A DNA stretch of 64,000 bases from Takakia lepidozioides (lineage: Eukaryota; Plantae; Bryophyta): contig CM060732.1 in the NCBI GenBank assembly GCA_030704615.1, positions 23,188,001-23,252,000 of the forward strand, given 5' to 3'. The translations under genes and the position numbers were made by a program. Positions within the stretch are counted from its first letter, which is position 1. Every line of letters starts with the position of its first letter. Of this stretch, positions 2,270 through 22,700 are shown one piece after another. Below the pieces are notes generated by a model that saw only the letters and a program-made list of their open reading frames with translations, was not told the DNA's origin and searched no databases.

Positions 2270-2480
2270 TCAGCACAGGCCGTCACAGGTCAACACGGGC
2301 CACCACATGCCGCCATAGTCCCACATAGGTCACCGGTCACAGCCCGTCACAGCCCCACACCGGTCACAGGGTCACAGCCCATCACAACCCCACACAGGCC
2401 ACAGGTCGCAGCCGTCACAGCCGTCACAGCCCCACACAAGCCACATGTCACAGCCCATCACACAGGTCACAGGGTCACAA
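2270..2480. repeat. Degenerate short-period GTCACAG/CCCACA array
   Basis: GTCACAG(CC) occurs about ten times, interspersed with CCCCACAC. Confidence 0.7.
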
Positions 2481-3719
2481 CCCCCTCCATTGCCGCTCAT
2501 GGTAGTTTAGCCATTTCTCCAAGGGGTTTAGCCACACCAAACTAGGGTTTGTATCTCCTTGAACTTTAGGCTTCTTTGCACCGAGCTATGGCGGTTGTGA
2601 GGAAATCAGCAAGGTATTCTTGCTCTCTTCGGCTCCCACACACCACCAATTGAGCCTCCCGCGCTTGCCGTGAAGATAACCACTCCAGGGCCTAAATCTG
2701 CCTTGACCCCTGGATTGACACTTGGGCCAATCCCAAATGTCAATATGTAAAAGCTAGTTATTTTCACACTAGTGGTGAATAACTTGACAAAGCTTTCTAC
2801 CACGCTCTCTTTTACACACAAGTGTTAATTATACTAACACCTTGCACTCGTAGATTTTAATCATGGTTAATTAGAAATAATTATTTCTAGCTAATTAGGA
2901 CTTTACACTTTTATATTTGTATTTTGTGGGCATTGGGATTTCATTTGGTTCCATGTGCCAAGTCATTTCATTTGGGACATGGAGATAAATTTCATGTACC
3001 AAGTGAGGTGACGAACTTTAACTTGGAACATGGAGAGGCTTATCTCCATGGAAGCCCTAGGAAGGCTGGTCTTTGCGGTGGTTCTTGAGTGGTAGAGTGT
3101 GAGGTCTGTATGGTGGATTCCTTTAGCAGAGGTGCCATTGGCTTGACTTATATTGAGTGATAGAGTGGGGTTTCACTTGGAAGAGTTGGGTTTGTTCTTT
3201 AGCATATGGTGGTTCCATGCTTGAAGGTTTTCCATTGCATTCCGCCTCATCATCCCTTTTATTTCCTTTATAACTAGAAGAAGAACTGCTTCCATGACAC
3301 ATGTCATCTATATCCAGCCCCCATTAATGACAATTGTATTCAAAGCACAATCGCAAAGAACCTATCATAACTACTCAACAATCTATTATGAACTTATGTT
3401 GGTCTATAACGGAGCATACTAGGCTTACCCGATGAGTTGAATGCAAGCGTGGGAGCCTTGCCAGTACGGTCGCCGGGAATGGCCGTACCGGCGACATTCC
3501 GGCTGGACACGTTGTCAAATCCCCACCCCCCTTCCTCCCCTCTCACTTGCGAGCCTGTATTTGTAAATGATTAGGAAATCAGAATTGCATGTGTATTACG
3601 AAGTTGAGGTCGGAGGTTCAATACTTGGCAGTGAAATTGCGTTGACTGGTTGGATGTACGTGGGACTAATTAATATATTTTTTCATCTCCAAAATAATCC
3701 TAAGTCCAAGATCGAGGCT

Positions 3720-4035
3720 ACGCTCCCCTGTTCCCTCTGTCCCCTCATTGTTCCCAGTCCCGCTCCCCTATCCCTGTCCCTTGTCCTCGCTCCCCTATTC
3801 TTGGTCTTCGTTCCCCTCCTCACCGTACGGAACGCAGCTCGCTCCCCTGTTCCCGATCCTCGCTCCCCTCCTCGTCCTATGGAACGTGGCTCACTCCCGT
3901 GTTCCCGGTCCTCCCTCCCCTCCTTGTCCTATGGAACGTGGCTCGCTCCCCTGTTCCTGGTCCTCGCTCCCCTACCCGCCCTGTGGAATGTGGCTCGCTC
4001 CCTTGTTCGTGGTCCCCGCTCCCATGTCCCTCTAT
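3720..4035. repeat. C/T-rich minisatellite with CTCGCTCCCCTGTTCC / ATGGAACGTGG core
   Basis: GGAA(C/T)G(T/C)(G/A)GCTC(G/A)CTCCC recurs at ~50-bp spacing (~3829, ~3881, ~3933, ~3985); the overlapping ORFs are low-complexity artefacts. Confidence 0.75.
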
Positions 4036-4577
4036 GGGGAGCAAGGAACAGGAGAGCAAAATTGGAGAATGTTTGGGAACATGGTCCTAAAAATGGGGAG
4101 CGTGAGGAGGGAGGGGGAGGTGTGGAGCGCTCCCCACCTCCACAGTGGGGGAAGAGATTTGACAGGTAGTATGCCGGAGCCTCCCTGAGCTCAGGCCAGC
4201 GGGCCCACCACCTCACATGCTTGCCTTAAACTCGCCGGGTAAGCCTAGTCCTTGCCGTCTATAACTTATGACAACAACAAGTGCAAATCACGCACCTGCA
4301 TTAAGATCTTCTATTGTTCCTATTTTTCGCATAAAATATATTTTCACTTGGCCCTATGGGTTCAAGTGACACCATAAGTTACGCTTGCTTTGGCAACGCG
4401 TCCACCTTTATATTTTCAAAACATTGTTCTCATAAGTCTCAATAGTAGTGCAGAGCACCACGCAGCTCTAGTCCTAGTGACAACTTAGTTCGGAGACTAG
4501 TTTTATGTAGAGCAGTAATAGGGTGTCCTAGTGCCACATCATCGTCATCAATTTTTAAAATCTGCCCAAACTGCTAG

Positions 4578-4800
4578 TGTAATCCCAGCTAATGTAACCC
4601 TGGGTGGTGTCACCTTTGTCTTGTGTGACTGCTCTTGGTCAAATTTCGCGACCAAGTGTGAGTTATAGAGTTCCCTTCCATGTAACCCAGTGTAACCCTG
4701 AGTGGACTCCGTAACCCGGTGTAACTCCAACTCCCAGCCATGTAACCTGGTGTAACCCCCCAGTGGAGTTTAAACTTTACACGCATATAACCCAATGTCA
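4578..4800. repeat. TGTAACCC short-period array
   Basis: TGTAAC(C/T) recurs repeatedly, e.g. 4593, 4681, 4691, 4741, 4751. Confidence 0.65.
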
Positions 4801-4814
4801 CCTGATTGGAGTTA

Positions 4815-5030
4815 AACTCCCTTCAGTTCCATGTCACTCTTGAGGGAAAATTGACATGTCAGAAACCGCCATACTGTCACTCGCTTTAGTTCTATGTCAC
4901 TCTCAAGGGATGGTGGGGGGGGGGTAAGATGTGACATGTCAGAAACCGGCGTACTGTCACTCCCATTCAGTTCCATGTCACTCTCAAAGGAGAGTGGGGA
5001 AGATTTGACATGACAGAAACCGACGTACTT
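4815..5030. repeat. Three ~75-bp tandem units (CAGTTCCATGTCACTCT...TGACATGTCAGAAACCG)
   Basis: Three recognisable copies, each with an internal ATGTCA/TGACAT inverted pair. Confidence 0.75.
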
Positions 5031-5393
5031 CCCTGTCAGAGATTGCACGTGTGAATTAAGTCCTTTCGCAGTGATCTCCTATTCCACCTACCCAATTTCC
5101 AGCGTCTGTGGAGTGAAAGTAAAAAGTGAACTCTATGGCTGCCCATCGATTCTGTGTAGCCCAGTAATGGTGGTGTGCTTGTTCAGGAATGCAGGGTAAG
5201 GCTGCGGTGCAGAGCACGGAGGTGAGGACTGCGTGCAGGCGTGTGCATCGGATGTGCAAAGGGCTCATCATGTTTCTGGGAGGCCATTGAGGCTTGTTCC
5301 ATACCCACATCACCATCTTCTTGTCTGTGAAGGATTGGGAGGTGTTGGAGAAGGGGGGAAATCAAAGAGAGAGAGAGAGAGAGGGATTGAGAA

Positions 5394-6236
5394 ATGGGAT
5401 CGAGAGCAGGCAGTGGGGTTGCGGTGGGCTCGGTGTTGCCTCCATTTTTGGACCCTTCACACAGAAATTTGGCAGCAACTGCAAGGGCAGCCCCGCACTG
5501 TCTGCCAATTTCCCTACAGACAACTCTCTCTGTAAAGCATGCAGCTTCCTTGTCTGCCTTCTCAGCTGCGTCACCTCTGAATTGTCCTTGCTCTAGGAGG
5601 TGCGCGTATGCACCAGCCTCCTGGTCTGTGCGGGCGGCCGCACAGAAGCAGAAGAGAGGAAAACAACAGACTTCCGAGATTTCGTCTCCTCCACTGCCAG
5701 ATGGGGTTCTCACTCCCTCGAGCCCCTTTGCACCGCCGGAAATCTTAGAGGATGATATTCCGTCTGAGGAAGATGCAGGTTCCAGCTCAGGAGGCGCTGG
5801 TAGTGACCTTGTTGAAGAAGCGGGGACTTTGGGGGAAGGGGATCCTGGCATTCCGTCTGAGAGCAATGCGCTTGTGGTGGATGGGGCAGAGGTTGTTGAT
5901 GATGAAAGGGACGCAGAAATTCCAACCAAAATAGCCGATGATGGAGAGAGGCCGCTGTCGATAGGGCAGGCCTTGAATGCACTCAGGAAAGAGAGGGTGA
6001 CTGCAGGCCTGGACAATCCAGCAAGTACCACGGATTTCTGGAGTGGTGTGGTGGAAGAGACCAAACTTGTTGAGTGGCCTTCGTTTAAGAAAGTGCTGGG
6101 AACTACAGGGGTGGTGGTCGCCATCATTTTCGGTTCATCAATCGTTTTGCTTACTGTGAATGCAATTTTGGCAGAGCTTTCAGATAACGTATTTAACAAC
6201 CCTGAAATTGCCAAGGCCTGGTTGAAGGGTTTTTGA
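5394..6236 (+). CDS. SECE1: Plastid preprotein translocase subunit SecE1 (intronless, N-terminal transit peptide)
   Basis: C-terminal SecE domain GVVEETKLVEWPSFKKVLGTTGVVVAIIFGSSIVLLTVNAILAELSDNVF matches plant SECE1; Ser/Ala-rich N-terminus; (GA)n immediately upstream. Confidence 0.93.
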   Translation: MGSRAGSGVAVGSVLPPFLDPSHRNLAATARAAPHCLPISLQTTLSVKHAASLSAFSAASPLNCPCSRRCAYAPASWSVRAAAQKQKRGKQQTSEISSPPLPDGVLTPSSPFAPPEILEDDIPSEEDAGSSSGGAGSDLVEEAGTLGEGDPGIPSESNALVVDGAEVVDDERDAEIPTKIADDGERPLSIGQALNALRKERVTAGLDNPASTTDFWSGVVEETKLVEWPSFKKVLGTTGVVVAIIFGSSIVLLTVNAILAELSDNVFNNPEIAKAWLKGF

Positions 6237-7634
6237 GGAGAGGGATTTTTAGACAGTTGTGTAGATCTTGAAGGGCACTGTCATTCCTGGAAACTGTAAT
6301 TTATGTGTATACTGGCAAACCAAATCATTGTTTTCTTGGGAAGAGAGAAAGTTCCCAAGTTCAAATGTGCCTGTGCTGGTTGAAGTTAGGGTTTGGAAAA
6401 ATTGTGAGCATAAGCTTTATATACAGTGACTTTTAACTTAGTTCCTGAGCTTCTCAATGGCATGAATGAAATTGTAAAACCTAGCAGGTACTGTGCATTC
6501 CCGGAGTTGATTCTTCCTCCATTTGGCGCCACCATTTGCTCAAAGGTTGTCAATTCTTGCTGAATACTTGTGAATGCCAAAGGGCTGAAGCCTTTAGTTA
6601 CAAAGCCTTGCTAATGTTAGCCTGACTGCGACTTTTGTAGTAGCAACAAAGCCACAATTGATTCAGCCTTGGGAAATGAGAGGTCGACACCCTTGACACA
6701 AAACACATACCATTGAATCTTGTTATGAATACAAATGGGAGTTTCAACTCTATATTAGATACCTCCAAGCTCTTACTAAGGGTTATATGGTACAAGGTTA
6801 GGGGCCAATTATAATCATCTTTTCTTTCATTCCATCCTGTTGGCATCCCGACAGTTACGGATGGCTGATTGTGTTGCTATAGCTTAGAGGTGTTGAACAC
6901 CTGCTAAAAAATTGTAGACTTGGGCTTCATATCTATTGGAAGTGTGGCAATGCTAACATCGCCTGTGCTATCAATTGGGGAAATGTCTGAAAACATTAGG
7001 AACCATTTACTACTAAATTGTGTTGCTGGTCTAGGAGTCATTGCCAGGGCCGCGTAGATGAACTACCGGAACTCCAATTTACCTTCAATGGAGGTTACTT
7101 TGCTTGGGCCACCTTCACAAGGTTGCATGAAATCACATCTGCAGTCTGCTTGTTGTGATGATTTGACAAATGCCCCTTCCCTTCTCCTGCTCTCCTGACT
7201 AGTTCAAGCATTGGTTATCAGACCACTGGAAGCCTAATTTAGTAACTGTCCAAACCAGTAAGCTCATGCAGGAAGGGCAGGCCACAACATGTGAAGAATG
7301 CTGTTTATCATTTCCATTGCTCCCCCCTCCAGCCAAACAACTTGACACATTTGCAACCCCAAAAAAGCTGACTGGTCCGTGTAACTAAGTCAAAAACCAT
7401 AGGCTTTTCTCTGGATGAAGCTAGATGGGTGCCTTGCTGCCATAGCCTTGCGACAAACACAGGAAAACACCCAGTGCTTCCTCTAATGCTAATAGGAGGT
7501 ACTGCCACTTTCCACGGGTAGCAACCAAATGACAGCAGAAGCGTTGGGGCAGGTATAAGCTGCCAGGTCAACACTTGAAAAGCACCCTGAAAAGTGTATC
7601 ACCCTCTGGTAAATAAGTGCTTATCCCATATTTC

Positions 7635-10600
7635 CTAGTACCGACCAGGCCAAGTACCAGCTTCCCGTTCTTCATTCCACTTGTCGATCTGCACAATAAG
7701 TTTTGGAGTCAGGCATGCATTTTCTTTGTTTTTCAATACTGAACAGGCAGTTCTTTATTGAATGGATAAGAGAGGCTGCTCCTATAATTGCTGGCTATTA
7801 CATATCCCTTGCAGGCTTGTTTCTACCTGGATACCTGAGGCAATTATGTGCGCAAACCTGTCCAATAATAATTTGTGAACCTTCAGAAGCACCGACAACA
7901 ATCTGCTTAAACCAGAAGCTGATTGAATTGCCCGCATTAGCATCACATAAGGAAGTGTGATGTGAACACCCAGAAATGCTACTATAGGCCTCTATCTGAA
8001 CACAAAGTGACACATGCATTCTCGACCAGCAGGAGACAAAAGAATTTGACAAAAGTCTTAGCAATGTGTCATTTGCGCACAACAGTGACATGTTTGCCTC
8101 AGGTTGCACAGTAACTACCAGCAGAATACTCTCCTTTACACATGAATTTGACAAAAGGGTAAATTTACAGAGGTATCATTCGCGTACCCATTCGCCAGGA
8201 CACAGAGAGCGATAATACTTGGCATACTTTTGACACTCCTTTGCATCCTCTCCCTTCTCCGCAGCACACCTACATGGCTCCTCTCGAAGTAATTAGTCAG
8301 CAAGTTATGAAATGACAGACATTAAATGATCAGTACCACCCATGCTCAGTAAAGAGGAGAAGAGTTTTTGGACACTGGCTGGAACATCCTGGAGAGACAT
8401 GTGGAAGGAGAGAGGGTTGAATGAACTAGAGTGGTTGAAGCCAGATGCTGGAAATGGTGCCTTCGATAATGCTGCGCTGCTTGAGAGAGAAAGCTGCATT
8501 GTCCTGACAAACCAACAAGAGATGATTGATCGCTGCCGACTTTGCGAGGTTCCGTTACAACCGACACACAAAAATGACGACGATGACGTGGCGACGCACT
8601 ATGGCACCCTATTCCTGCTCTACGCTAAACTAGTCTCCGACCTTCAGTCGTCACTAGAATTTACTAGGGCTTCGCGTTGCTCCGCACTACTAGCGACGAC
8701 TTCTGAGAACTCACTTGTGGAACTCATTGTAGCGAGTGTAGCAATGCTTGGCCTGATTGGTAGTTGGAAACCGCCAATCCCATGGCGCGGTCTTTATATC
8801 ATCCACCTGTCAAGTAGCCCCACCCATATGTCAGCAACTTCCATCCCCGATGGCACATGAATTATCATTCAGATCTTGGCTACCTCTACATTGTGCATTT
8901 GCCATTTGTCATACTTCAAATGACACAACAAAAGAACTACATTACTTCAAGTTTACTACACCTCTTTCCTGAAGGATCATTTTGCAATCTCTGCGCTACA
9001 ACTGCTGTGAGATAGAACATTGTACTACCTTCCACTCAATCTAGTCTGTGTCCAGAGAGGAAGATTGCCAATATATGCATCAAAAGGAGACTGCTCACAG
9101 CTTCACAATGTTTCTTAAGGCCAAAAACAAGAAATGGGAGTGGTCATCAACCAGCGTGACAATGGCAGACCCCTTAAGAACAAAACCCTAGTGACATGGT
9201 AACGAATTCCACATAAAATTTCTCACCGAAAACCATCAGGTAGAGCATAGAGAATATGAAATGGAGAACTGCCTACTTTCTTTGAAACAAAATGCAAACA
9301 GCAGCTATACTGGGCCAATTTGGCACACTCCTCACCAGAGTTTAGAATTAACAATGAAGTTTGAAAACTAGACTTTCTAGCACTGTCCAGATGCCATGCT
9401 TGGCTAGCAAGATGCAAGGTTGGAAAGAAGGAAAAGTTATCAGACAAACAATCTCTGGAGATTCTAGCATGACAGAAGGGACGGTCTCTGTTACATACTG
9501 TGATCTTAGGTTTCTCCTCTTCCTCGCCCTGGTCACTTTCCTCCTCCGTCTCCTGTACAGCAAAGCAAGTACCACCTCACCAAGCTAACAACAAGGCAAA
9601 TTTCTCCAAGAATCTCACACCATTGTACCCAATATACAGATGAGAATCATAAATACATTTAGAACTGGCAACTGTGAGATAAACTCTCCACAATTGCAAT
9701 TGGACTGCGAAACATATGTTAGGAATACTTCCTACTGTCTACCAAACTCTCTGCCCATCTGAATGCCATAGGAAGCCACACGGTCTATAACAATGCGGCA
9801 TAGCAAGAAAATGGGACGAGATGATTCCAAACAAGCACATCAACTTCAAGTCACAAGGATCATACCCTGACTGCAACCGCGTTGTCTTCCTCCTCTCCGT
9901 CCTGCAAACAGTGGACACTACCACCCCTTCAACAAATATAGTACACAAACTGACAAGCACAATATATCACACTATACAGCTGGTCCCTGGCTTTGTCAAA
10001 ATGCATAGGCAAGAATTATATACACACTTGTGATACAGAAATTGCAAATTACATCAGGCGAAAGCAACCACGATTCTCTGCTTTGATAACAACACACCAA
10101 AACCTGGCACCTGTGGGCAAAAAGTCTCATCATTCTGACCTGCCTAATCAGCTCTAATACGGAGTCCCGTCAGTCACAACAAGTTTCATACACGGCAAAG
10201 CAGGCTGCACAGATTAGATCCCAACAAGGCACACCAGGTTCCATTCAGCTCAAGTGAGTCATACCCCAGCAGTTCCGTTTTCTTCATCCCCATCCTGCAG
10301 GCATTGGCCAGTTCCGCGCCTTTCAACAAAGAGGATAAGATGTAATAAAAATGACACAAATCTATACAGTATCTTCAGAGCAGTCTTACTCACCTACCCA
10401 CAGATGTGAAAATGTGAGCGTTGAACAGGTGATATGAGATTTCAAAACTAGACAAATCAAAGACTGTGACTAAATTGCTTTGAAGACAACAACTAGAAGG
10501 CACTTTGAGTGGGGCACAGACCCGCCCTTGTAAAGTAATATCACGTACCAGAACACTACTGCACGCATACAAGGAGACACCATGAATAGTTCCAAATATG

Positions 10601-11749
10601 AAAAGAAAGTTCCTTTTAACTTGAATGAATCATACCCCAACAGTTTTGTCTTCTTCATCACTGTCCTGCAGGCATTGGACAATACCGCCCCTTTCAACAA
10701 AACAGTATAGCACTACCAGCGACTCAAATGTATTTACAACAATAACCTCAGCATTTCACATTCAAATTGCATATCCCAAATGGGCGTTCATTGTCTGCTA
10801 GAAGTGTGAAGGTGAGAACCATATCCAAAGTTTGTGACCCAGAAACGCAAGCCACTGGGCTTGACCCTAACAAAAAACATTCTTGGACAATGCTAGTAAA
10901 GCATGTTTCTAAGTTCTAACACAAAGGCCCCAGCATTTTCAAAAAAATTGCTGCATGACATGCAAACAGCATAAAATAGATCGAAACAAGCAAGCCAAGA
11001 TCCACTTTAGCAGATCCATCGAATCATACCCTAACAGTTTTGTCTTCCCTTCCTGCAGGCATTGCCCAATACCGTCCCTTTCAATAACTAGACACACGCA
11101 CTAACAAGGATCCAAATTCTTCCAGTAACCGCAGCATTCCAAGCGCGAATCACTTCACGAAAGTTCAGCCACGATTTCCGTCCCAACGTACAGATGGACG
11201 CAGCAAGCAAGCGTAGGATAGGGAGATTGCAAGCTACATCGTCCACATGACAACTGAACTTTTGCTTGGCGTGTGCCAACGCCTCAATCAACAATGACAC
11301 CATCCCCGTTGACCAAACCCCACACCTAGTCCACCTTCCAGACCAGATTTACAACCTGGCATGAAGACAGGGTGCAGCAATTACAAATGAGCATAACAAG
11401 ATCCATTTAGCTCAAGTGAGTCGTACCCTAACAGTGTCGCTTTCTTCAATCCTTTCCTGCAGAAAATTGCCAAAACCGCACCTTCAGAAGCTACCCCACG
11501 CGATAACTAGCTCCCACGCATCCAAATTGCATGCATACCCTACCCATTCTGGAGCTGCAGAGGGGTCGACAGAAGACCCAACGGGACACTCTCCCTCAAG
11601 ACTAAGAGGGAGACAGATGGAACCCTAAACATCAGAGGCCTCACAACACCCAAGCCGATTGCAAACACAGACAGACAAACCCCACAGACCTGATCTGCCT
11701 CGTCCTGCACCTTGCTTCCTTCCTCGGACAATGCAATGGCGTTCCCCAT
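7635..11749 (-). CDS. COX6B: Cytochrome c oxidase subunit 6b with an acidic N-terminal extension. Proposed exons: 11749-11690, 11456-11427, 10665-10636, 10294-10265, 9901-9866, 9552-9499, 8806-8715, 8269-8188, 7688-7635
   Basis: Spliced core reads VDDIKTAPWDWRFPTTNQAKHCYTRYNEFHK|CAAEKGEDAKECQKYAKYYRSLCPGEW|IDKWNEEREAGTWPGRY*, the COX6b Cys signature, with canonical phase-compatible GT-AG sites. Upstream phase-0 micro-exons encode acidic peptides and are less certain than the core. Confidence 0.88.
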
Positions 11750-12279
11750 CACGATCCTTGTCTCGTTTCCACCAATCTCTCTCTCCTCTCCCCCACAGAT
11801 AATCCCACGCACTCGCTGCCTCTCAAGCCTCTCGGAAAATCCAACAAGCCCTCTCACTTTGACCCACGGAATACGCTCCAGGAAATCCCACGTGGCTCGG
11901 GAGATGGGTTATTCCAAAGGAAGGAGTTCCCCATGTGGGTCTTGGTCTTGCGCTCAAATCCCTTTCAGGGTTTTGTGCCTGCATAAAATGTGGGCTCTAA
12001 CTTCTAACTAACCCCAAAACTTTCTTCCGAACGGTGTCGTCATCGTCACGAGACTCTGCCCGCAGGCGTGTCCACAGCAACCGCATGCAGAGGGATGGCG
12101 TGTGTATAAAGGGTAGCGATCTGCGAGTCTGGAGCTACCCAACAACCGTTATCGACTTCCTGGCTCTCTACATCTTTGTGGGTTGGCACCAAATTATCGG
12201 CTTGAGCTGAGCTGTGAGAGGGAGGGGGTTGGAAGGGCGGGAGTGCCAGGGAAGGGAAGGTCAGTGCCGGGCAGGAGCG
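11750..12279. promoter_or_regulatory. Putative bidirectional promoter and 5' UTRs between COX6b and QCR8
   Basis: Start codons diverge 530 bp apart; contains GACCCAC (11861), CACGTG (11889), GTGGGTC (11935), TGGGCT (11991) and TATAAA (12105). Confidence 0.55.
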
Positions 12280-13885
12280 ATGGGAAAGGCTGCGGTGCGG
12301 CTGAAGGAGGTGGTGTACTCTCTGTCGCCCAACCACCAGCACGTCATGACTGGGTTGATGAAGGGTGCGTCTTACAAGCTGAGCAAAAGGATACATGAGA
12401 ACTGGGTCTCGGCTCTCACTCTGGTCATCCCCGTCGTTGGCACGTACTGGTTTGTTTCTCTCCGAGATTTTCAATGCAGTTCTATGGCAACCGACCTTGT
12501 TCAATGTGTCGCATTCTGTATCTTTTTCTACTTGCACATGGCAATTGTAAGAAAGCGGGCCAGTTCTTTCTTCCTCATTATTGTCTAAATAGGTTTGACG
12601 ACATCTCGTGGGTGGTCACCAGTGTGGGTCTGAGAATAGTCACTGCGAGACCTGGATACCAATGCTTCTTGGAGCGCTGCTTTTTTATTTTCGATATTGG
12701 AGTTTTCATTAAAGACCCTGCCTTGACTCTCACATTTTTCCCCGGTCCTTCTTCTCGGTTAATTCTGGAAATCCAGAACCCTTTTAGTTGTGGCCTCGCA
12801 CAAGTACCGGGCGGAGTTGGAGACCAGTCTTAGGTTTCTTCTCAGATAAGGCACCATTTTGGATCTGCCTGTGTGTTTTCCTCCATCCATTGAAGCATGG
12901 AGAGAGACTTGTGATAATTCAGTCTCGAGCTTGCACCTGCAGCCCACTGTGCCTGGAAGGTTTCTATAGTCTGCATGGGTTTTCTGATATATCTTTAATC
13001 TGTCCTGCTCTTTGTTATGAGAACTTGCTGCACTGATCCTTCTGGGCACTTTCTTTTGTGCCCCCACTGGATCAGAGTTCGACTCCTATATCTTGGAAGC
13101 AGGATTACCCCGTCAAACAGGCTAAGTCCTGGCGGAGAGTAGAAGGATCTGAATCTAAGTCCGCAAGCCTTGACCCTGCTGGATAAATCTGACTTAGAGG
13201 CTGTAGTGTCCAAAGCCATGTCTGTTGCCAGGAAATTGTCTGTTAGGCAGAAAACTTCCCTGAACTTGTTTCCAGTTTCTGACATGGGAGAGGCCATCAT
13301 AGATGACCTCAAGGGTTTACCCACCCTCGGCACTAGAAATTTAAACTCGGGGTGGGAATCCTACCTTTGAACAGCAAACAGAAGCAGAAAGGAAAGGGGG
13401 ATTGCAAATGCCCGTTGTGTGGGCAACCTGAAGACAATATTCACTTTCTGATTCATTGTCCTGGGTACTCTCACCAGAGAGATGTCCTCTTCCAATCCAT
13501 CAAGGGAATTGTGCCTGTACCTCTGTTTACCGACTTTGAAAGTCTCGAGGCTGAGCCAAGAGCCCAGGCACCTTTTGGGGCCTAGTTATTGGGTAAACCA
13601 CACACAGCAGATTGATGCTTGTGTAAAGGGATTTCTAGAGGATATCTGGATCATTGTCTTGTCCAAGGTAAGTCATACGACCGGTGTCAGCCCTTGACAA
13701 AGGTAGTTTCTGTCCCTTTGTGTTCCGCTCAAACTGAGCGCGGGGTCAACGGCCACAAGGCTATGGCAAACATCTTATGAGTACATTCTTTCCTTATCTA
13801 ATGGGATATAAAAATACTTTGGGCTTGTCTGAACAGGTATGCTGAGCACAGCCGGGAGATGGAGAAGCTACACCACCGCTCCTAA
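12280..13885 (+). CDS. QCR8: Cytochrome b-c1 complex subunit 8 (UQCRQ/QCR8); exons 12280-12449 and 13837-13885
   Basis: Spliced 72-aa product MGKAAVRLKEVVYSLSPNHQHVMTGL...HENWVSALTLVIPVVGTYW|YAEHSREMEKLHHRS* matches plant QCR8; phase-2 GT-AG intron. Confidence 0.93.
12600..13770 (+). mobile_element. 5'-truncated, decayed non-LTR retrotransposon (LINE) 3' fragment inside the QCR8 intron
   Basis: CPLCGQPEDNIHFLIHCPGYSHQR (~13407-13480) is the CCHC zinc motif typical of the LINE ORF2 C-terminus; frameshifts around it; boundaries approximate. Confidence 0.65.
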
Positions 13886-14770
13886 AGTGAAGTAGTAGTT
13901 GAGCAAAAGTGCAACCTGCAAGTTGTGTAGCAATGGCACCGCATTTGACATGGACGATTTTTCACATATGGAGAGATTCATATGTATAGATGGCTTTGAT
14001 TAGAGGTGGGTTTTCAAGTACTTTTGAACTGAATGTTTTTGCCTTGGCACAGTTTTTTGTGATTAGTGCTATGAAGGTAACTTGGGTGGAATGTCAATGT
14101 GGTTCTTGAGGTCGCCCGGCCCCCAGTATTATTTTGCACAATTTAGATTTGTTGACAATTTATGACTTGAAACAAGCAGATTATTAGATGGTAGCTTTCT
14201 TATGGTACATTAAATCATGAGAAATAGCCCTAAAACAGGCTCTCATACACAGATTGATGAAATTTTTACCTATCTTTCACAAGTTATATCTTTGGAAGTA
14301 AAGGTTTAAGCTCCTCCTTCAGGAGGGGGTGACATAGGAAGTTGTGCAATGAGAAACTGCAGGTTATCAGTAGTATACACACCAAGTGCTTGTGTGCAGT
14401 AAATGGTAAAAAACCTGAAAAATTTGGTGAATTAGCCTGCAACCTTTTTGTAAGGGTTTGTACACACAAACCCGGGAGGCTTTCAACACCCAATTCGCAA
14501 TGCTGTCATTTGTGGTTACGTAGATCATCGGCGCAAATTTGAGCTTACAGACCTTTGCATAGTTTTCCAACTAATCAGCACTTGTGGTTCTGGTTGGGTC
14601 AATAGTGTGAGGTTTCAGCAACCAGAGGTTGTCTGGGCCGGCCTCATCTGAGGTCCCAAATGTGCCAGAATCTGTCTGGCACAACTTCAAAATATGCATT
14701 CTTCGTCTGTCTGGCCCCCAAATTCCATGGTTTTTACGGTCAAGTGAAAGTGGCAGGGATGCATGCATTT

Positions 14771-17593
14771 TCACCAGTAGTTCCCACAAGAACAAACCCC
14801 ATCTTGGAAGTGGTGAAAGCGGTTGGCATCTCGTACAACAATTGTTCGAGCTGCAATCTTTGAGATGAACTTGGTGGCTGTGTGGCAGTCACCACAGACC
14901 CGAAGGTTCTTGATGACACGAATCGGCGTGCCAGGGGATGTGCAGATGAGACCAAACGCAATAGCTAGCCTCTCACTGTGGTAACAAAGAGAAAATTCCT
15001 TTTGCTGCTCCTCCACATCGTGCAATACATAGCGTGTGTCAGGCACATACCCGGCCTCCTTCATCTGCCCAGACAATCTATTCAGCTCAGCATGGATTTC
15101 CTCAATTTGTGGATGCACTTCGTCGTCTACAAGAAATGTATGCACCTGGTTGTTCACCTCAATGCAGCTGCGCCCTGGCTCCTTTCTGACACCTCTGTCC
15201 ACCATCATGTTTCTCACCTTTGCAGCGTCGTCCCACCTGCCAGTGGCAGCATAGATGTTTGATAGCAGCACATACGTTGGAGCATGCAGTGGATTCAACT
15301 TGAGAAGACATTTTGCCGCGCGTTCTGCTAACTCCACATTGCCATGAATACTGCAAGCACCAAGCAAGGCTCCCCACACCAGAGCATCTGGTGCCATTGG
15401 CATTTTGTTTATCAAGTCTTCTGCCTCATCCAATCGCCCTGCACGGCCAAGCAGGTCCACCATACAGCCAAAATGATCGACTGTAGGAGTGACGCCATGA
15501 GCCTGAATCATGGATTCAAAGTAGTGGCAACCTTCATCCACCAGGCCCACATGGCTGCATGCTGACAGAACACATATGAAGGTGATTCTGTCTGGCTTCA
15601 AGCCTTCCTTTTGCATTTGGTCAAACAGTTCCAGAGCCTCCCTACCAAAGCCATGCTGAGCATATCCTGCAATCATTGCACTCCATGAGACAACATTTTG
15701 TTGAGCCATATTGTCAAACACTTGACGGGCATCCTTCATGCTCCCGCATTTGGCATACATGTTGACAAGGGCAGTATCCAGAATGATATCTGGCACAATT
15801 CCAGCCTTTAGGATGTCGCTGTGGATCTCTACACCCTTTTCCAGTGCTGCTAGGCTGGCACAGGCCTGGAGAACACAAATGAATGTGACCATGTCAGGTT
15901 TCAACCCTTCCTGTACCATTTGCTCGTAGGTCTCCAAAGCCTCACTACCGCACCTGTGCTGAGCATATCCTGCAATCATTGCACTCCATGAGATCACATT
16001 TCGTTGAGCCATATTGTCAAATACTCCACGTGCATCCTCTATGCTCCCACATTTGGCATACATGTCGACAAGAGCAGTGTCCAGAATGATATCTGGCGCA
16101 ATTCCAGCTTTCATGATCTCAGCATGGACCTCTTTGCCCTTTTCCAGAGCTACCAAGCTGGCACACACCTTGAGAATGCAAATGAACGTAATCTTGTCAG
16201 GTGTCACGCCTTGCTGTATCATTTGCTCATAAATCTGGAAAGCCGCCATAGCATCTCCAAAGCCTCCATACCCTGCAATCATTGCACTCCATGAGACCAC
16301 ATCTCGCTCAGCCATACTGTCAAACACTTTTCGCGCATCCTTTATATTTCCACATTTGGCATACATGTCGACAAGTGTATTCTCCAGCATGATATCCAGC
16401 ACAATTCCAGCTTTCATGATGTCAGCATGGACCTCTTTGCCCTTTTCCATGTCTGCCAGGCTGGCACATGCACTAAGAATGCAAATGAATGTGACTTTGC
16501 TTGGAGTCGCCCCTTCCCCTATCATTTGCTCATAGGTCTCCAATGCCTCCCTACCACACCCATGCTGGGCATATCCTGCGATCATGGCATTCCATGAGGC
16601 TACATCTCGTTGAACCATATTCTCAAACACTTGACGCGCATCCTCTATGTTCCCGCATTTGGCGTACATGTTGAAAAGGGTAGTCTCCAGAATGATATCT
16701 AGCACAATTGCAGCTTTGATAATGTCAGCATGGACCTCTTTGCCCTTTTCAAGGGCTCCAAGGCTGGCACACGCATTGAGAACACAAGCGAATGTGACTT
16801 TGCCAGGGGTCATTCCTTCGTGTTTCATTCGGTCATAGATCTCCAAAGCCTCCCTACCACAACCATGCAGAGCATATCCTGCGATCATTGTGTTCCATGA
16901 AACTTCATCCCTCTTTGCCATATTGTCGAACACTTGGCATGCATCCTTTACACTCCCGCATTTTGCATACATGTCGATGAGGGTATTCTCCAAAATGATA
17001 TCTAGTGCAATTCCAGCTTTGAGGATGTCGGCATGGACCTCCTTGCCCTTATCCAGGGATGTCAGGCTGGCACATGCATTGAGAACAGAAATAAATGTCA
17101 CTCTGTCCGGTGTCACCTGTTCCTGTATCATTTGCTCATAGATCTCCGTGGCCTCCTTGCCACACCTCTGCTTGGCATATCCTGTTAACATTATAGTCCA
17201 TGTAAACACATCTCGTTCAGGCATTTTGTCAAAGACTTGGCGTGCATCCACCATACTTCTGCATTTGGCATACATGTTGACAAGGGTGTTGAGTAGAAAG
17301 AGGCTTGGCTTGAATCCACTTTGGATAATGTGGGCATGCACCTGCTTCCCCTCTGCTAGGGCTTTTTTCTTGATGCACTCCTGCAAGAGACAGACATAAG
17401 TATTGGAGTCTGCCAAAATGCCTCCTTGGTTCAAACTGTGCAGCGCCTGTTTCAGATGTCCTGCCTTGCATAGTATCCTCACATCCCCATGGATGCCAAA
17501 AGAGTCTTTGTTAACTCTCCCTCCTGGCCCTCTTTCAAAAGGCATGGTCGAGGTGCCTGATTCAAACAACTGTGCCTGATTCAACCCTGCCAT
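14771..17593 (-). CDS. PLS-class pentatricopeptide repeat protein with E1/E2 and DYW deaminase domain (C-to-U editing factor, PG-box type); probably the last exon of a longer gene
   Basis: Regular L-S-P triplets, P2-L2-S2, E motifs, PG box KEPGRSCIEV, zinc ligands HSERLA and CGDCH, terminal CSCGNYW*. Confidence 0.96.
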   Translation of the reverse strand: MAGLNQAQLFESGTSTMPFERGPGGRVNKDSFGIHGDVRILCKAGHLKQALHSLNQGGILADSNTYVCLLQECIKKKALAEGKQVHAHIIQSGFKPSLFLLNTLVNMYAKCRSMVDARQVFDKMPERDVFTWTIMLTGYAKQRCGKEATEIYEQMIQEQVTPDRVTFISVLNACASLTSLDKGKEVHADILKAGIALDIILENTLIDMYAKCGSVKDACQVFDNMAKRDEVSWNTMIAGYALHGCGREALEIYDRMKHEGMTPGKVTFACVLNACASLGALEKGKEVHADIIKAAIVLDIILETTLFNMYAKCGNIEDARQVFENMVQRDVASWNAMIAGYAQHGCGREALETYEQMIGEGATPSKVTFICILSACASLADMEKGKEVHADIMKAGIVLDIMLENTLVDMYAKCGNIKDARKVFDSMAERDVVSWSAMIAGYGGFGDAMAAFQIYEQMIQQGVTPDKITFICILKVCASLVALEKGKEVHAEIMKAGIAPDIILDTALVDMYAKCGSIEDARGVFDNMAQRNVISWSAMIAGYAQHRCGSEALETYEQMVQEGLKPDMVTFICVLQACASLAALEKGVEIHSDILKAGIVPDIILDTALVNMYAKCGSMKDARQVFDNMAQQNVVSWSAMIAGYAQHGFGREALELFDQMQKEGLKPDRITFICVLSACSHVGLVDEGCHYFESMIQAHGVTPTVDHFGCMVDLLGRAGRLDEAEDLINKMPMAPDALVWGALLGACSIHGNVELAERAAKCLLKLNPLHAPTYVLLSNIYAATGRWDDAAKVRNMMVDRGVRKEPGRSCIEVNNQVHTFLVDDEVHPQIEEIHAELNRLSGQMKEAGYVPDTRYVLHDVEEQQKEFSLCYHSERLAIAFGLICTSPGTPIRVIKNLRVCGDCHTATKFISKIAARTIVVRDANRFHHFQDGVCSCGNYW

Positions 17594-18056
17594 CCTGCAT
17601 GACTCAGAATTCTCAGTGACATATACCTTGACGCTGAACTCACCTCCAAGCTCCTACATACATCAAAGAAAGATCTCTTCACAAGGGCAGGCCCCTTTGC
17701 TATATATTAATAGGATTTGAGTAGGTTACACTTCCTATAACATTGTGTGAGGGTGCAGGCTTGTAATAGATTACCAATTCAGACACTGGCTGCAATACCA
17801 TTTTTGTCCTTCAATACCTGGAATACACCAAGAAGCACTTCTACCAAGTGCGTTCACATAAAAAGTTACATAAAAAACAACAGCGTAAAACTCGCCTATT
17901 CTGTGTAACCTCCTATGCACCCCAGACACAGAATTTCTGCTCCATTCTTACTCGAGCAACTTTTCCTTCCTTACACTTAACAGAACACCTAATGCACTAG
18001 AGATAAAGATAAGATTTTCAGTAGGTGTGCATCTATAAAGAGGAGACATGTCATAC

Positions 18057-18788
18057 TGGAAGGGTTCGAACGATTCCCCTCGACCTGGGCTAGCTGCAGA
18101 CGTGCGCCTAGCTGCTTCCAGCTTTTCCAATTGACCATCTACCCACGCAGGTTTGTTGCAGCTATCAATCCACAGTACCTGGTTGTTACTCTTGTGCTTG
18201 AAATCTGGTCGACTAGGATTGATCTGCACCCACACTCCATCCCTGCTTCCTTCAGCCACCACTGCCTCCGCAACACATTCTATGAATTCCCCCCCTTGCC
18301 ACAAGTTGCTGACAATCACATCCCATTACTTACACCCTCGCCCTCCGTGTCAGGCACTACTCTGCTTCTGCTGTGCCATAACAGGCATTCACCTTATTAG
18401 CTCGATTGTCCCACCATTGGCCGGGGTCTGAAAAATATTCGTTCCAAAGCTTTTCCTCGTCTCTATTTGGGTTTTTGGGATTTTTGCCTGTGTTGGCAGT
18501 TGGGTTGCTGGATGTGACCACGGACCGTGGCAACTCCATTTTCACCACCTCCGGACGGAATCCTTCCTCAAGCTGCCCTACAATTGGCTTGAAAATGTCC
18601 GAAACAAATCTCAAGGCGGGGTTTGGAAAATTCAGAGCTGCGTCAAGAGCGTACATTCCACCCCTTCTTGAAAATTCCATCCCAGGGGCAGGCTTGCAAG
18701 CAGTGTAGCCTCGGGGAGACTTGGGAGGGCAAACCCCGCAGCCAGCCATGTTCTCCAGGCGTTGCATGCATGCTGTATGCTCTGCCAT
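18057..18788 (-). CDS. Two exons (18788-18393; 18223-18057 or -17975) encoding an OSB-family PDF ssDNA-binding motif; likely N-terminus of the PPR-DYW gene
   Basis: Spliced: EEKLWNEYFSDPGQWWDNRANK|INPSRPDFKHKSNNQVLWIDSCNKPAWV, the WWDNR..K.NP..PDFKHK...LW motif of organellar OSB proteins; phase-0 AAG|GTGAAT...TGCAG|ATC intron. Confidence 0.8.
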
Positions 18789-19735
18789 GGTTGCTCCTTC
18801 TCCAACTAAGTCACCAAATCTTTTTCCAGCTACTCTCGGGGTAGTGAGTGGGAAAGATCACTTTAGCCAACACGCAAGTAAACCCCGACATCGATACACA
18901 AAAAGACTGTCAACTTGCATTTAGATAGCTCACGAACAAGAGAAGTCTGCAATCGGAGCGTCTCAGATGGAATGGTCATCAACCAGGGTCAGATATGCAG
19001 CCATGAACACACACCCTTTCTACAAGGTAACTATGTCAGGACGACAGCAGGCCTCCTCAAAGAAACCTGAGGTGGGGGGGGTGCAATCTTCATCTCTCCA
19101 ACCAATTCACCGAGCAGAACAGGACCCACAACCAGAACACAACTATCATTTCATTAGTGATCAAGAGGGAGGAGATGTAAGGATAGAGTGTGTTAACACA
19201 AACCGTTCGTCAACTGGTTATGGATGTTCAGGTTAACTTAATATGGCAGGGCTCTTGCAAAGTGGGTTTGACATGAGGTTTTGACTTCTCCTTTCATCGT
19301 TCCTCAATCTGTATTGTTAATGACAGACTCGTTCTCGTCATCTCATGTTTGAAGTGTCTGACCCACATAGAACATCTTTCACATCATTTATCACAGGACC
19401 CAAAAGGATTTTATTGAACTGAAAGTGATGTGATGAACTTCACAGCTTGTGGAGTATTGAGGGAGTCAAGCTTCACTAGGCTTTTAGGAGCTGTGGAGTT
19501 GGAGAAAAAATGGTCATGTCCAGTCACAGAGGAAACAAACCATCTGATTTGCAGATTGAATCCGAACGTGAAAGTTTCATTTAATGCTACAACAAAGTTA
19601 CTCTTGCTCTCTATTTTCATGTGAGCTTTCTGACTGGCCCAGGTTGTGCTAGGAGGACAAGCAGTCTACACAACTTCGCTTGAATGCCTTGTGTGCCCTG
19701 AAGTTCTCCTTCAAGATGTTGAGGTTCTCAGTATT

Positions 19736-22700
19736 CTATTTGAAAAGTCCAAATAGTCCTCGATTTGAACGCTTTGCCCTACCATCGGCGCCACTACTTC
19801 CAGCAGAAGTCGAATACCGCAGTTCCCGCAACTCGGTCCGCAAAATCTATCATGGGAGAGGCCACCCTCACACAAACGTTCTTGTTAGACCAGGTAAACG
19901 TTCAAATGAATACAAAACCCCAGCATTTTACGCACCCCCTTCCATCAATTGAATAAGCCTTGCAGGTTATCCCAAGCTTCTTTGCCAGCCCCTACAGGTG
20001 CTAAGAAACATCTTTGTCAACCTATAACACATGAATATAAACATTCCCACCTTCACCTTCGCTATCAGGAGAGATATTTGAATGAATTGCCAATGGGCGC
20101 TATGGTACTCAGAAGGGTAGAAATCAAGAGACCACCATATACAAATAACAAATCAAAGCAGACCAAAGCATGGTTCTAGCTCCACTGCAGATGTACCCCA
20201 TTATAGACAGATGGGCAACTTTAGTCTGGTGGCCAGTTTAAGCCATTGGCTTCCTGAATCAAGAGAGCATGGACCTTCAATTTGGAAAACCTTGAAATTT
20301 CTCAAGTTTAAGGATGAAGGGGCTCACATGTTGCAGGCGATACAGAATGCGACACTCACTTTCACAGAGAGCAACTGCCAGCTCTGCTAACTTGGGCTGA
20401 CTGCTGCCTCCAGTGCTTTTTGAGTAAGGAAGCTCCACATTTTTCTGAGATACACATCAGCAATATGTTGAAGACATAACTTACAAGGAACCATGGGATG
20501 TCCATCACTGACTCTGCAAATATGAACCCAACCAATCCAAAGCCACACAAGAATCTCTTTCTACAAGCACAAGATGACAACCATTGCATATGCATGCAAT
20601 TTATCTCCAAGCTCAAGTCTGGGGTGTTTACCTCTAGAAACCTGGTGTAGTTTGCTATGGATGTCTCACAGACTGCCAATATGAGCTCATAAGCTCTCAT
20701 TTCATCCTCTTCAGAGAGCAAAGATTGCTTATCTGTGGATCTGCTCCCTGCTGCCTTAGCTGCTGCAGCCATCTACCTGGGCCATTCCAGTACCATTGGT
20801 CCTATAATTCCAAGAGTACTCCAGCAGCATACAAAAGTACGAGTGAGACAGAGAGTCGAGTAAGCATGAAGTGTTATTTGCAAGCGTCCTCTACCTTTCG
20901 GGCAATGGTGCTTCACCCAATGCAGTTGCAACAGATTGGGTCTACGATCATACTCCCTAAAAGGATAGGCAAACCAGATTCAAAAGGATGGAAGTGCATT
21001 GAACAAAAGAGATTAGAGTAAGAGTGGACCCAGAAGCATCTCACACCTGAGAGAATTTAGGAGCAAATGATGCTGGGCTCACAGCAAGGCGGGCGTAAGC
21101 GAGTAGCTGTGCTGGCATGCCATCCCTTCTTACTGGAAACCTCTGAGGCCTAATTCTGTTAGGGATCAACATTTGTGTGACAGCAAAGGCAACCTGCACC
21201 ATTACAATTTGAAATATCCCCAACCATTGATCTGGTAGACAAGTAAAATACTTCCAAAGGCCAGGTTTTGTTTTAACTATCTCATGCAGTGGACAGATAA
21301 TGAATAGATAGGCAGGTGGGGAGAGATAATTCACCTTGAAAGAGAAGGCAAGAGATCTAAGAGAACAGAAACAAAATGCACAGCTCCATTATCTATGGCT
21401 GAAGTTCAGGGATGGATACGAAGACAGTCCATGTTCATTAAGAGCTGAAAGCTTGGCCTCATACAAATCATCATTTTGATCCAAAGTCACTTGCAGCTCC
21501 ACAGAGTCGTCGGGATTAAGTTCCGATGGAATAAACCCATATGCAAGTAGAAGCTCACTGTTGGACCTGTTTCCATAGGAGAGAAATACCTGAAACATGC
21601 ATGAGTGTTAAACTCTGACAAGCTATGTAATCAGCAAACGTAAAAGCATCGGCTCCTCTCTGTTGTCATGTTGCTGACAAGATTCTATGATTGGTTCAAG
21701 TGTCATCATATGCTTTCTTTCATCCATTGTCTTGCTCAGCAGCTCTGTGGCCTAGAAACCTTTTCAAAACCAGAGCATTTACAAACATTGAGGGGTTTCT
21801 GTGATCCTTGTAGGTAAAGAACACTAGAATCTGTGGTAGCATGTCTCTCATTAACAGACCAACCTGTTCCCCGGGTTCATAGCTGCGCTCCGTGCCAAAT
21901 ACCACAGACTTTCCATCACTGCGGTAGTCCAAAAATGTGTCTGCCTGCTCTCCACCAAGAAAAGATCTCACAACTTACACTGAAGTCACTATATACTGAA
22001 TCAGTATAATCCGCTACAATTTTCTACACCACATGCTGGTAAAATAGGTCACTACTCAAGCTGCCATCAAGCAGGTGAAGGCTTGCTAGCAGGCTTACAA
22101 GGCATGGCTCCAACATTATGCTTTCACATCAACCCCATTGGATTTAGAGAGACGCGTGTCTGAATTTAGAAAGAACTAAGCTTTTGGAGAAAGTTACCTG
22201 GGGACTGTGGTTTAACATGTCAGCCCATGGCACCAGTGCCAGCTGCCCTGATGACGGCAATCTTACCTAACCAGTTCCCACATCTGAATAATTAGTCATT
22301 CTGAAATATCCATCTTCTTTTCTTTACTTGTTGGTTACAAGATACTGTAGGGATGCCTACTTCTATCATAGCTCACAGAGAATCATCAGTGGGACAACTT
22401 GCCACTGCACCATTCTAGTTCCTTCTCACTTCACAGCACAAGAACACAGTACAGACAAGGTTGTAACTTCAGATACATAAATGTCTGCCTTGGCGCACCT
22501 TTCTTACCATGGCAGCACAAACACTCACAGGAGATAGCACTCTGCATGCTATCCCAAAAACTTTTAGGATGTGAGATAATCCCTCTTTTTGTCCACCTCC
22601 ATATTTTCTTTACGAATGGATCCCAAAGGTTGCAATCACTCTAGCCATAAGCTTAAGACTTGCCACTTGGTAAAGTCACTCATTTGCCAAATGACCCGAA

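What the first reader, a model, noticed from the sequence alone, without database searches (positions are those of the whole stretch)
14771..18788. OSB-type PDF ssDNA-binding motif apparently fused N-terminally to a PPR-DYW cytidine deaminase
Seen: a spliced PDF motif lies <500 bp upstream of the PPR ORF on the same strand, with no SSB/OB domain visible. Two GT-AG pairs join them in frame: phase 2, donor after 18057 (CCA|GTATGA) to 17594 (TGCAG|G ATG), and phase 0, donor after 17975 (AGT|GTAAGG) to 17653 (TGTAG|GAG); the PPR frame is open exactly up to that TAG. Established: PDF motifs mediate ssDNA binding in OSB proteins that police organellar recombination, and DYW is the C-to-U editing deaminase. 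Inference: an editing factor tethered to nucleoids, transcription bubbles or R-loops (co-transcriptional editing), or able to reach ssDNA.
Basis: partly seen in the sequence, partly recalled or inferred. Interest (0 to 1): 0.8.

Follow-up and report, generated by a model that had tools for sequence, protein, structure and literature searches.

The report
PPR-DYW RNA editor with OSB PDF module
This is an intact three-exon plant gene for an organelle RNA-editing enzyme (PPR-DYW type) that carries at its front the small "PDF" module otherwise known from organellar single-stranded-DNA-binding OSB proteins; it is one copy of an old, apparently undescribed gene family of seed-free plants.

Summary
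On the minus strand, 14771-17593 is an intact 940-aa PLS-class PPR-E-DYW ORF. Upstream, two small exons (18788-18393 and 18223-18057) together rebuild one complete 60-residue PDF motif.

A PDF profile built without the window hits only these two pieces in the 64 kb (E 4e-9 and 3e-13). The same kind of profile finds named OSB3.

In-frame GT-AG pairs are common here (98 combinations), so they prove nothing alone. The support is comparative. An annotated Diphasiastrum complanatum gene (1128 aa, 56% identical, collinear) has both introns at the same positions and phases.

The intron inside the PDF motif also occurs in Sphagnum PDF-PPR genes and in an angiosperm OSB-like gene. I confirmed PDF+PPR proteins in a lycophyte, mosses and a fern, and found no paper describing them. 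The scan has already noted this architecture many times elsewhere in this genome.

Not shown: transcripts of this copy, and any role of the module. Nucleoid tethering or DNA editing remains speculation.

The parts
18393..18788 (-). Exon 1: ATG at 18788, about 110 aa of lineage-specific N-terminus, then the first half of the PDF motif (18393-18461, DEEKLWNEYFSDPGQWWDNRANK). Phase-0 donor AAG|GTGAAT.
   Evidence: ORF listing. PDF HMM positions 1-25, E 3.8e-9. Alignment A1. Donor at the same position and phase as Diphasiastrum L007. An in-frame stop lies upstream and no upstream coding exon was seen. No homologue of the N-terminal part was found.
18224..18392 (-). Intron 1 (169 nt, GT..AG, phase 0) inside the PDF motif.
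   Evidence: Same position and phase in Diphasiastrum P0308/L007 (164 nt) and P0274/L002, about the same position in Sphagnum P0287/L004, and in the PDF repeats of Kingdonia OSB-like P0121/L006. One identical contig of run X1 (18258-18719) runs through part of it, so it is unspliced RNA or DNA.
18057..18223 (-). Exon 2: second half of the PDF motif (18116-18223, INPSRPDFKHKSNNQVLWIDSCNKPAWVDGQLEKLE) plus an 18-19 aa linker. Phase-2 donor CA|GTATGA.
   Evidence: PDF HMM positions 23-59, E 2.9e-13. tblastn with OSB proteins, E down to 1e-9. Donor phase and sequence type as in L007, CG|GTATGT.
17595..18056 (-). Intron 2 (462 nt, GT..AG, phase 2) between the PDF-linker exon and the PPR exon.
   Evidence: Equivalent phase-2 intron (140 nt, acceptor TTATGCAG|G) in Diphasiastrum L007. 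No contig of runs X1 or X2 lies in 17720-18041. Contigs of paralogues break at 17594/17595 and resume in exon 2, one of them in frame.
14771..17594 (-). Exon 3: linker, PLS-class PPR array (about 15386-17515), E1-E2 (15182-15385), DYW deaminase domain (14774-15181) and stop codon (14771-14773).
   Evidence: Pfam PPR, E and DYW hits. Regular 101-aa P1-L1-S1 triplets, then P2-L2-S2-E1-E2-DYW. 56% identity over 925 aa, collinear with P0308 residues 204-1128.
15567..17287 (-). 303-bp tandem repeat, 5.7 copies, 78% matches, no indels: the DNA of the P1-L1-S1 triplets.
   Evidence: Tandem Repeats Finder. The specificity positions (5th and last residue) differ between copies.
14882..14980 (-). Zinc-binding deaminase signature of the DYW domain: HSE (from 14980) and CGDCH (from 14896).
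   Evidence: Motif scan of the six frames and sequence of the domain.

Best explanation
One three-exon gene on the minus strand (18788-14771) encodes a protein of about 1128 aa. The order is a lineage-specific N-terminus, one complete OSB-type PDF module, a linker of about 45 aa, a PLS-class PPR array of about 20 motifs, E1-E2, and a DYW:PG-type cytidine deaminase. It is a member of an old family of PDF-PPR proteins of seed-free land plants. Most likely it works as a canonical site-specific C-to-U RNA editing factor of mitochondria or plastids. In that model the PPR array reads the RNA 5' of the target C and the DYW domain deaminates it. This follows from established knowledge of PPR-DYW proteins and is not shown here. 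The PDF module is a confidently predicted compact mini-domain kept under selection. It sits at the N-terminal end of the array, that is, on the 5' side of the bound RNA. I infer that it adds a sequence-unspecific contact to single-stranded nucleic acid or to a partner. Which ligand it binds is unknown.
For: Shown: intact frames and catalytic motifs. The two exons tile the PDF profile with 18 of 18 near-invariant residues. A profile of PPR-linked PDF motifs (with the window's two exon pieces as partial rows) finds named OSB3 of Amborella at E 9e-66. Window exon 1 tail, exon 2 and exon 3 align collinearly to Diphasiastrum P0308 at residues 143-163, 165-206 and 204-1128. Both introns match that gene in position and phase, 0 and 2. 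The PDF-internal intron is shared with Sphagnum PDF-PPR genes and an angiosperm OSB-like gene. PDF+PPR occurs in 30 of the 120 best PPR homologues, all Diphasiastrum. It occurs in 13 of the 150 best PDF hits, including Sphagnum, Adiantum and an uninterrupted 1371-aa ORF on Logan contig L001. In a tree of PDF segments, 12 of 13 PPR-linked ones form one clade, SH-aLRT 99. The AF2 model of PDF has pLDDT 92.8. It superposes on ESM Atlas clusters of SSB-family and of PPR/DYW proteins at TM 0.86-0.94. Read data: no contigs in intron 2, and paralogue contigs join exon 3 at exactly 17594 to exon 2, one with 117+11 nt, which is phase 2.
Against: No junction read or contig was obtained for this copy. 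The only identical contig in the PDF region runs into intron 1. The two runs are RNA only by guess. The linker between PDF and the first PPR-like motif is about 30 aa longer than in relatives, and exon 3 begins almost exactly at an ATG, so an independent PPR product is conceivable. The N-terminus does not look like a classic presequence, and I had no targeting predictor. The terminal tripeptide is NYW, not DYW. Nucleic-acid binding by PDF in a PPR context has never been tested.
Confidence: 0.75

Rival explanations
1. There are two separate transcription units. A small PDF-only gene or gene relic (exons 1-2) ends in what I call intron 2, and the PPR-DYW ORF is expressed on its own from the ATG at 17593.
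For: The ATG lies one base after the proposed acceptor. In-frame GT-AG pairs are frequent by chance. The identical X1 contig covers exon 1 plus part of intron 1 and does not show splicing.
Against: Intron positions and phases match an annotated fused Diphasiastrum gene, and the whole protein is collinear with it. A stand-alone PPR would have only about 33 residues before its first PPR-like motif, which is short for an organellar presequence (inference). Paralogue contigs bridge exon 2 to 17594. No free-standing PDF-only family appeared: the short PDF proteins I inspected run straight into PPR sequence.
Confidence: 0.08
2. The gene model is right, but this copy is a silent or recently retired paralogue of a very large family and contributes no protein.
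For: Expression of this copy was not shown. Earlier notes of the scan report many decayed copies in the same genome, which I did not check. The PPR exon is a young-looking 303-bp tandem array.
Against: All three exons are open over about 3.4 kb. All PDF near-invariant residues and all deaminase motifs are intact, and specificity residues differ between repeats as in working arrays. Identical contigs of X1 lie on exon 1 and across the stop codon.
Confidence: 0.12
3. The fusion is real, but the PDF module does not bind nucleic acid here. It serves protein-protein contact (for example with OSB or other nucleoid or editosome proteins, or for oligomerisation), or it caps or stabilises the N-terminal end of the PPR solenoid.
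For: The module is a compact helix/three short strands/helix mini-domain with no solved structural relative, so its ligand cannot be read from the fold. In one subtype (Sphagnum, some Diphasiastrum) it abuts the first P motif with no linker.
Against: A review states that the PDF motif of AtOSB1 is sufficient for ssDNA binding (PMC6963530). The conserved residues are rich in Trp, Phe, Lys and Arg, as expected of a base-stacking surface (inference).
Confidence: 0.3

Closest known systems
Diphasiastrum complanatum O6H91_07G017400 (KAJ7548565.1, P0308, 1128 aa), an unnamed 'hypothetical protein' that stands for dozens of similar Diphasiastrum models
   Same: Same order of parts: N-terminus, PDF, linker, PLS array, E, DYW. 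56% identity over the PPR-DYW exon. Same two introns at the same positions and phases.
   Different: The window copy has a linker about 30 aa longer and a 462-nt rather than 140-nt second intron. Its N-terminus is unrelated, and it ends NYW instead of DYW.
OSB proteins (AtOSB1-4; OSB3 of Amborella, P0130)
   Same: The 50-60 residue PDF motif is homologous: profile E 9e-66 to OSB3. The predicted fold is the same, TM 0.93 to an SSB-family cluster. In the one OSB-like gene whose exons I could map (Kingdonia P0121), the phase-0 intron sits at the same place inside the motif.
   Different: OSB proteins have an N-terminal OB/SSB-like domain followed by C-terminal PDF motifs. Here there is no OB domain, and the PDF is N-terminal to an RNA-binding PPR array and a deaminase.
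Canonical PLS-class PPR-DYW editing factors (for example Physcomitrium PPR56, Arabidopsis OTP86)
   Same: P1-L1-S1 triplets, P2-L2-S2, E1, E2, and a DYW domain with PG box, HSE and CxDCH.
   Different: In the papers I could search, those proteins are described with only a targeting peptide before the first PPR motif. No PDF module is mentioned.

Membership tests
PLS-class PPR-DYW (DYW:PG) organellar C-to-U RNA editing factors | Array of P1-L1-S1 triplets ending in P2-L2-S2 | tested here: met
   Pfam PPR families, E 1e-106 to 1e-112. Regular 101-aa triplets from residue 98 to 633, then P2-L2-S2.
PLS-class PPR-DYW (DYW:PG) organellar C-to-U RNA editing factors | E1/E2 motifs between the array and the deaminase | tested here: met
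   PF20431 E_motif, E 3.5e-20, residues 750-812.
PLS-class PPR-DYW (DYW:PG) organellar C-to-U RNA editing factors | DYW deaminase domain with PG box, HxE and CxxCH zinc signature | tested here: met
   PF14432, E 1.9e-43, full length 1-93 of 93. KEPGRS, HSERLA and CGDCH are present.
PLS-class PPR-DYW (DYW:PG) organellar C-to-U RNA editing factors | C-terminal tripeptide D-Y-W | tested here: inconclusive
   The protein ends CSCGNYW, an Asp-to-Asn variant. Whether that matters for activity cannot be told here.
PLS-class PPR-DYW (DYW:PG) organellar C-to-U RNA editing factors | Import into mitochondria or plastids, and editing of a defined site | not testable with these tools
   No targeting predictor is available, and I have no organelle genome or editome of this organism.
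[quoted passage not shown] | One or more PDF motifs | tested here: met
   One complete motif, split by an intron.
[quoted passage not shown] | N-terminal OB-fold / SSB-like domain | tested here: not met
   No SSB hit in the upstream ORFs. tblastn of five OSB-type proteins hits only the PDF exons in the 64 kb. It is therefore not an OSB protein and only shares the module.
PDF-PPR proteins of seed-free land plants (unnamed family) | PDF module(s) N-terminal to a PLS array in one gene, with the phase-0 intron inside the motif | tested here: met
   Collinearity and conserved introns with P0308/L007. Same intron in P0274/L002 and P0287/L004.
PDF-PPR proteins of seed-free land plants (unnamed family) | A single mRNA that joins the PDF exons to the PPR exon | tested here: inconclusive
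   Only contig data from two runs of uncertain type. Paralogue contigs bridge the junction at 17594, but no contig of this copy does.

The most novel reading that the evidence does not exclude
The PDF module gives a whole class of PPR-DYW editors of seed-free plants a grip on single-stranded DNA or nucleoids. Editing would then be coupled to transcription or R-loops, or the deaminase could even act on exposed organellar ssDNA. That would link the heavy editing of these lineages to organelle genome maintenance.
Probability: 0.1. Interest if true: 0.9.

Novelty: new variant of a known kind. Interest (0 to 1): 0.6.

Why it matters
PPR-DYW proteins are the enzymes of plant organelle RNA editing and templates for programmable RNA base editors. 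They are described as a targeting peptide, a PPR array, E motifs and a DYW domain. A conserved extra module borrowed from the organellar ssDNA-binding OSB proteins was missing from every paper I could search. It is present in mosses, a lycophyte and a fern and is inherited together with its intron. It has probably been overlooked because Pfam has no model for it. It offers a testable handle on two questions: how editing factors find RNA in or near nucleoids, and what the PDF motif does. The locus itself is one ordinary-looking member of that family.

Tried and rejected
- Exon 1 searched alone in the 5.8-billion protein set: no candidate. This says little, because of the tool's length window.
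- The look-up of encoding contigs gave nothing for P0028, P0006, P0219, P0301, P0300 and P0001. The longest isoforms P0274, P0287, P0121 and P0308 worked.
- Foldseek against PDB (best E 4.3) and VIA-align against 48,161 chains (best Z 2.9) found no solved relative of the PDF fold.
- PHROGs scan of 114 PDF segments: nothing below E 0.01.
- The bacterial promoter/terminator scan is irrelevant to a plant nuclear gene and was ignored.
- The original OSB1 paper (PMC1785405) is not held, so ssDNA binding by PDF is cited through a review.
- Pfam on the neighbouring ORFs 13352-13585 and 20362-20772 found nothing. My guess that the first is a LINE zinc-finger relic is not supported.
It has no counterpart in the Diphasiastrum gene and would add about 47 unconserved residues.
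Exons were searched by reference one at a time. Scripts only checked frame continuity across candidate junctions.
Full report
**What is in the sequence**

On the minus strand, 14771-17593 is a 940-aa ORF. Pfam finds PPR repeats (E about 1e-106 to 1e-112), an E motif (3.5e-20) and a full-length DYW_deaminase domain (1.9e-43).

The array is very regular. After a PPR-like start there are P1-L1-S1 triplets of exactly 101 residues from residue 98 to 633, then P2-L2-S2, E1, E2 and DYW. At DNA level this is a 303-bp tandem repeat of 5.7 copies, 78% matches and no indels. The specificity positions (fifth and last residue) differ between copies.

The PG box (KEPGRS), HSE and CGDCH are intact, and the protein ends CSCGNYW. 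This is the DYW:PG, C-to-U type by sequence.

**The PDF motif**

Upstream on the same strand, an ORF starting at ATG 18788 ends its coding sense with ...EEKLWNEYFSDPGQWWDNRANK, followed by GTGAAT (last exon base 18393). After 169 nt...GTGCAG is followed by INPSRPDFKHKSNNQVLWIDSCNKPAWVDGQLEKLE... from 18223.

Aligned with 26 PDF motifs taken from PPR proteins, the two pieces tile the 60-residue motif without overlap or gap. They keep all 18 near-invariant residues.

I built an HMM from 114 PDF segments of other proteins and ran it against all 2644 stop-to-stop pieces of the six frames of the window. Only these two pieces are significant: E 3.8e-9 for profile positions 1-25 and E 2.9e-13 for positions 23-59. 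The next best piece has E 0.19. The motif is therefore real, occurs once in the window, and is far beyond chance.

**It is the OSB motif**

A profile made of PDF motifs from PPR proteins (with the window's two exon pieces as partial rows) was searched against 1.84 billion representatives. It gave 1264 hits at E up to 0.001. Among the best is OSB3 of Amborella trichopoda, named so by NCBI (E 9e-66, four motifs). Other hits carry a Pfam SSB domain.

OSB-type proteins hit the window only at the two PDF exons by tblastn. Nothing in the 64 kb resembles their OB/SSB part.

**Is the PDF joined to the PPR?**

That is weak by itself. I counted 98 stop-free, in-frame donor-acceptor combinations between exon 2 and the PPR frame.

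The support comes from comparison:

- Of the 120 best homologues of the PPR ORF, 30 carry one to three PDF motifs in front of their PPR array. All 30 are annotated proteins of the lycophyte Diphasiastrum complanatum.
- I fetched the genomic locus of one of them, O6H91_07G017400 (P0308, 1128 aa, with DYW; L007).
- Its exon ...WWDNRFTK|GTGTGG is phase 0. A 164-nt intron follows, then ATGCAG|KNPKYPDFKHK...
- That exon ends CG|GTATGT in phase 2. A 140-nt intron follows, then TTATGCAG|G GTG GCC..., and the rest of the protein lies in one exon.
- The window has ...WWDNRANK|GTGAAT (phase 0), a 169-nt intron, GTGCAG|INPSRPDFKHK..., an exon end CA|GTATGA (phase 2), a 462-nt intron, and TCATGCAG|G ATG GCA....
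- The three window pieces align collinearly to P0308 at residues 143-163, 165-206 and 204-1128. The last alignment has 56% identity over 925 residues.

It gives no support to the phase-0 alternative.

**Read evidence is partial**

The one run search found two small contig sets of the same organism whose RNA nature is only guessed. When they were laid on 14500-19300, no contig lies in 17720-18041 (inside intron 2) or in 18847-19007.

Identical contigs lie on exon 1 and across the stop codon. One identical contig (18258-18719) runs from exon 1 into intron 1. It is either unspliced RNA or DNA.

Contigs of paralogues (90-95% alike) stop exactly at 17594 or 17595 and resume in exon 2. One resumes at 18107 with 11 other letters between. 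That makes 117+11 nt, which is phase 2 and in frame with exon 3.

This is consistent with spliced or intron-less PDF-PPR paralogues. It does not show the transcript of this copy.

**How old and how wide the family is**

Among the 150 best PDF hits, 13 continue into PPR sequence. By source names they come from Diphasiastrum, several Sphagnum species (one with a DYW domain) and the fern Adiantum capillus-veneris. Others come from unnamed Logan contigs. Pfam confirms PPR, E and DYW in them.

One Logan contig (L001) carries an uninterrupted 1371-aa ORF with three PDF motifs followed by a PPR array.

In a tree of 114 PDF segments, 12 of the 13 PPR-linked ones fall in one clade (SH-aLRT 99). Three short proteins join them, and on inspection these also run into PPR sequence. 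The tree has only 60 columns, so this is suggestive of one old fusion, not proof.

The phase-0 intron after DNRxxK is also present in another Diphasiastrum gene and, at about the same place, in a Sphagnum jensenii gene. It is also present in the PDF repeats of an OSB-like gene of the angiosperm Kingdonia uniflora. The module therefore seems to have moved, or been kept, together with its intron.

None of the Ginkgo, Cryptomeria or Pinus PPR hits has the motif. That is a hint, not a census.

**Structure of the module**

AlphaFold2 on the 114-row alignment gives a confident model (pLDDT 92.8). It has a helix, three short strands and a C-terminal helix.

No solved structure resembles it: Foldseek best E is 4.3 and VIA-align best Z is 2.9.

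In the ESM Atlas it superposes at TM 0.93 on a streptophyte SSB-family cluster. It superposes at TM 0.86-0.94 on three streptophyte PPR/DYW clusters. This is an independent, structure-based confirmation of both contexts.

**Literature**

In the searchable library, "PDF motif" in this sense occurs in three papers, all on OSB proteins and organellar DNA replication or repair. None links it to PPR proteins. Searches combining OSB1 with DYW, or organellar ssDNA-binding with pentatricopeptide and "fused", gave nothing relevant.

A 2026 kingdom-wide survey of editing factors and their domain fusions mentions neither OSB nor PDF.

Pfam has no model for the motif. The N-terminal 215 and 300 residues of two PDF-PPR proteins give no Pfam hit. 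That probably explains the gap. Subscription journals are not covered, so "undescribed" means "not found".

**Earlier notes of this scan**

Look-ups show that the same architecture has been noted many times elsewhere in this genome (297 notes hold the words). Earlier agents called it an old family of liverworts, mosses, lycophytes and ferns with no paper. They reported some other copies as spliced and expressed, and others as decayed.

I re-derived the moss, lycophyte and fern distribution, the identity with OSB and the blank in the literature myself. I did not test liverworts or the expression of other copies.

**Mechanism**

Shown: the parts and their order. From established knowledge of PPR-DYW factors, the array binds RNA in parallel with N-terminal motifs on the 5' side, and the DYW domain deaminates a C a few nucleotides 3' of the bound stretch.

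Inferred: the PDF module sits beyond the 5' end of the recognised RNA. It is rich in conserved Trp, Phe, Lys and Arg, and a review reports it sufficient for ssDNA binding in AtOSB1 (PMC6963530). It probably adds an unspecific contact to single-stranded nucleic acid or to a partner.

Tethering to nucleoids, co-transcriptional editing or action on ssDNA are possible, but no evidence here bears on them.

The joined product was not sent to any search or fold tool.

By its best homologues it is a seed-free land plant or close to one.

Noticed in passing
model m7168151634f1 (PDF motif of P0135:32-91); no window coordinates: The ESM Atlas shape search lists two clusters of hypothetical proteins of tailed phages (Uroviricota; 54 and 122 members, 187-199 aa) at TM 0.69-0.76 over 55-57 residues of the PDF model. 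A PHROGs scan of 114 PDF segments gave no sequence support (best E 0.012). This may be a lead to the origin of the module, or only a common small fold.
   Followed up: partly
window 13427-14812 (approximately): A 1386-nt contig of run X1 (depth 78, one mismatch) covers the last 40 nt of the DYW ORF and the stop codon. It runs on about 1.07 kb past the end of the laid stretch. This is either a long 3' UTR or plain genomic DNA in a run of unknown type.
   Followed up: no
L006 (Kingdonia uniflora JACGCM010002261.1), gene 301-18123: An annotated 1160-aa angiosperm protein (P0121) has 13 PDF matches by the profile, and my exon map shows about a dozen copies. Nearly all are built from the same two-exon unit, and an OB-like stretch lies near the C-terminal end. 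It is an unusually long PDF array, if the gene model is right.
   Followed up: partly
L004 (Sphagnum jensenii), L002 (Diphasiastrum); proteins P0287, P0274, P0219, P0259: There is a second subtype of PDF-PPR genes. The PDF motif runs straight into the first P motif (...WV..L..M.PGT.Q...F.WN...). The second half of PDF and the whole PPR array share one exon, so there is no second intron. Sphagnum P0287 has a classic-looking presequence before the PDF.
   Followed up: partly
P0154 (Striga hermonthica, 1063 aa): A protein named 'Interactor of constitutive active ROPs 2, chloroplastic' carries three PDF matches around residues 371-425. It may be another context of the motif or a merged gene model.
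   Followed up: no
window 18847-19168: Run X1 has depth about 14 in 19008-19168 but none in 18847-19007. If the run is RNA, this could be a 5' UTR exon separated by an intron from the exon with the ATG. No coding exon is visible there.
   Followed up: partly
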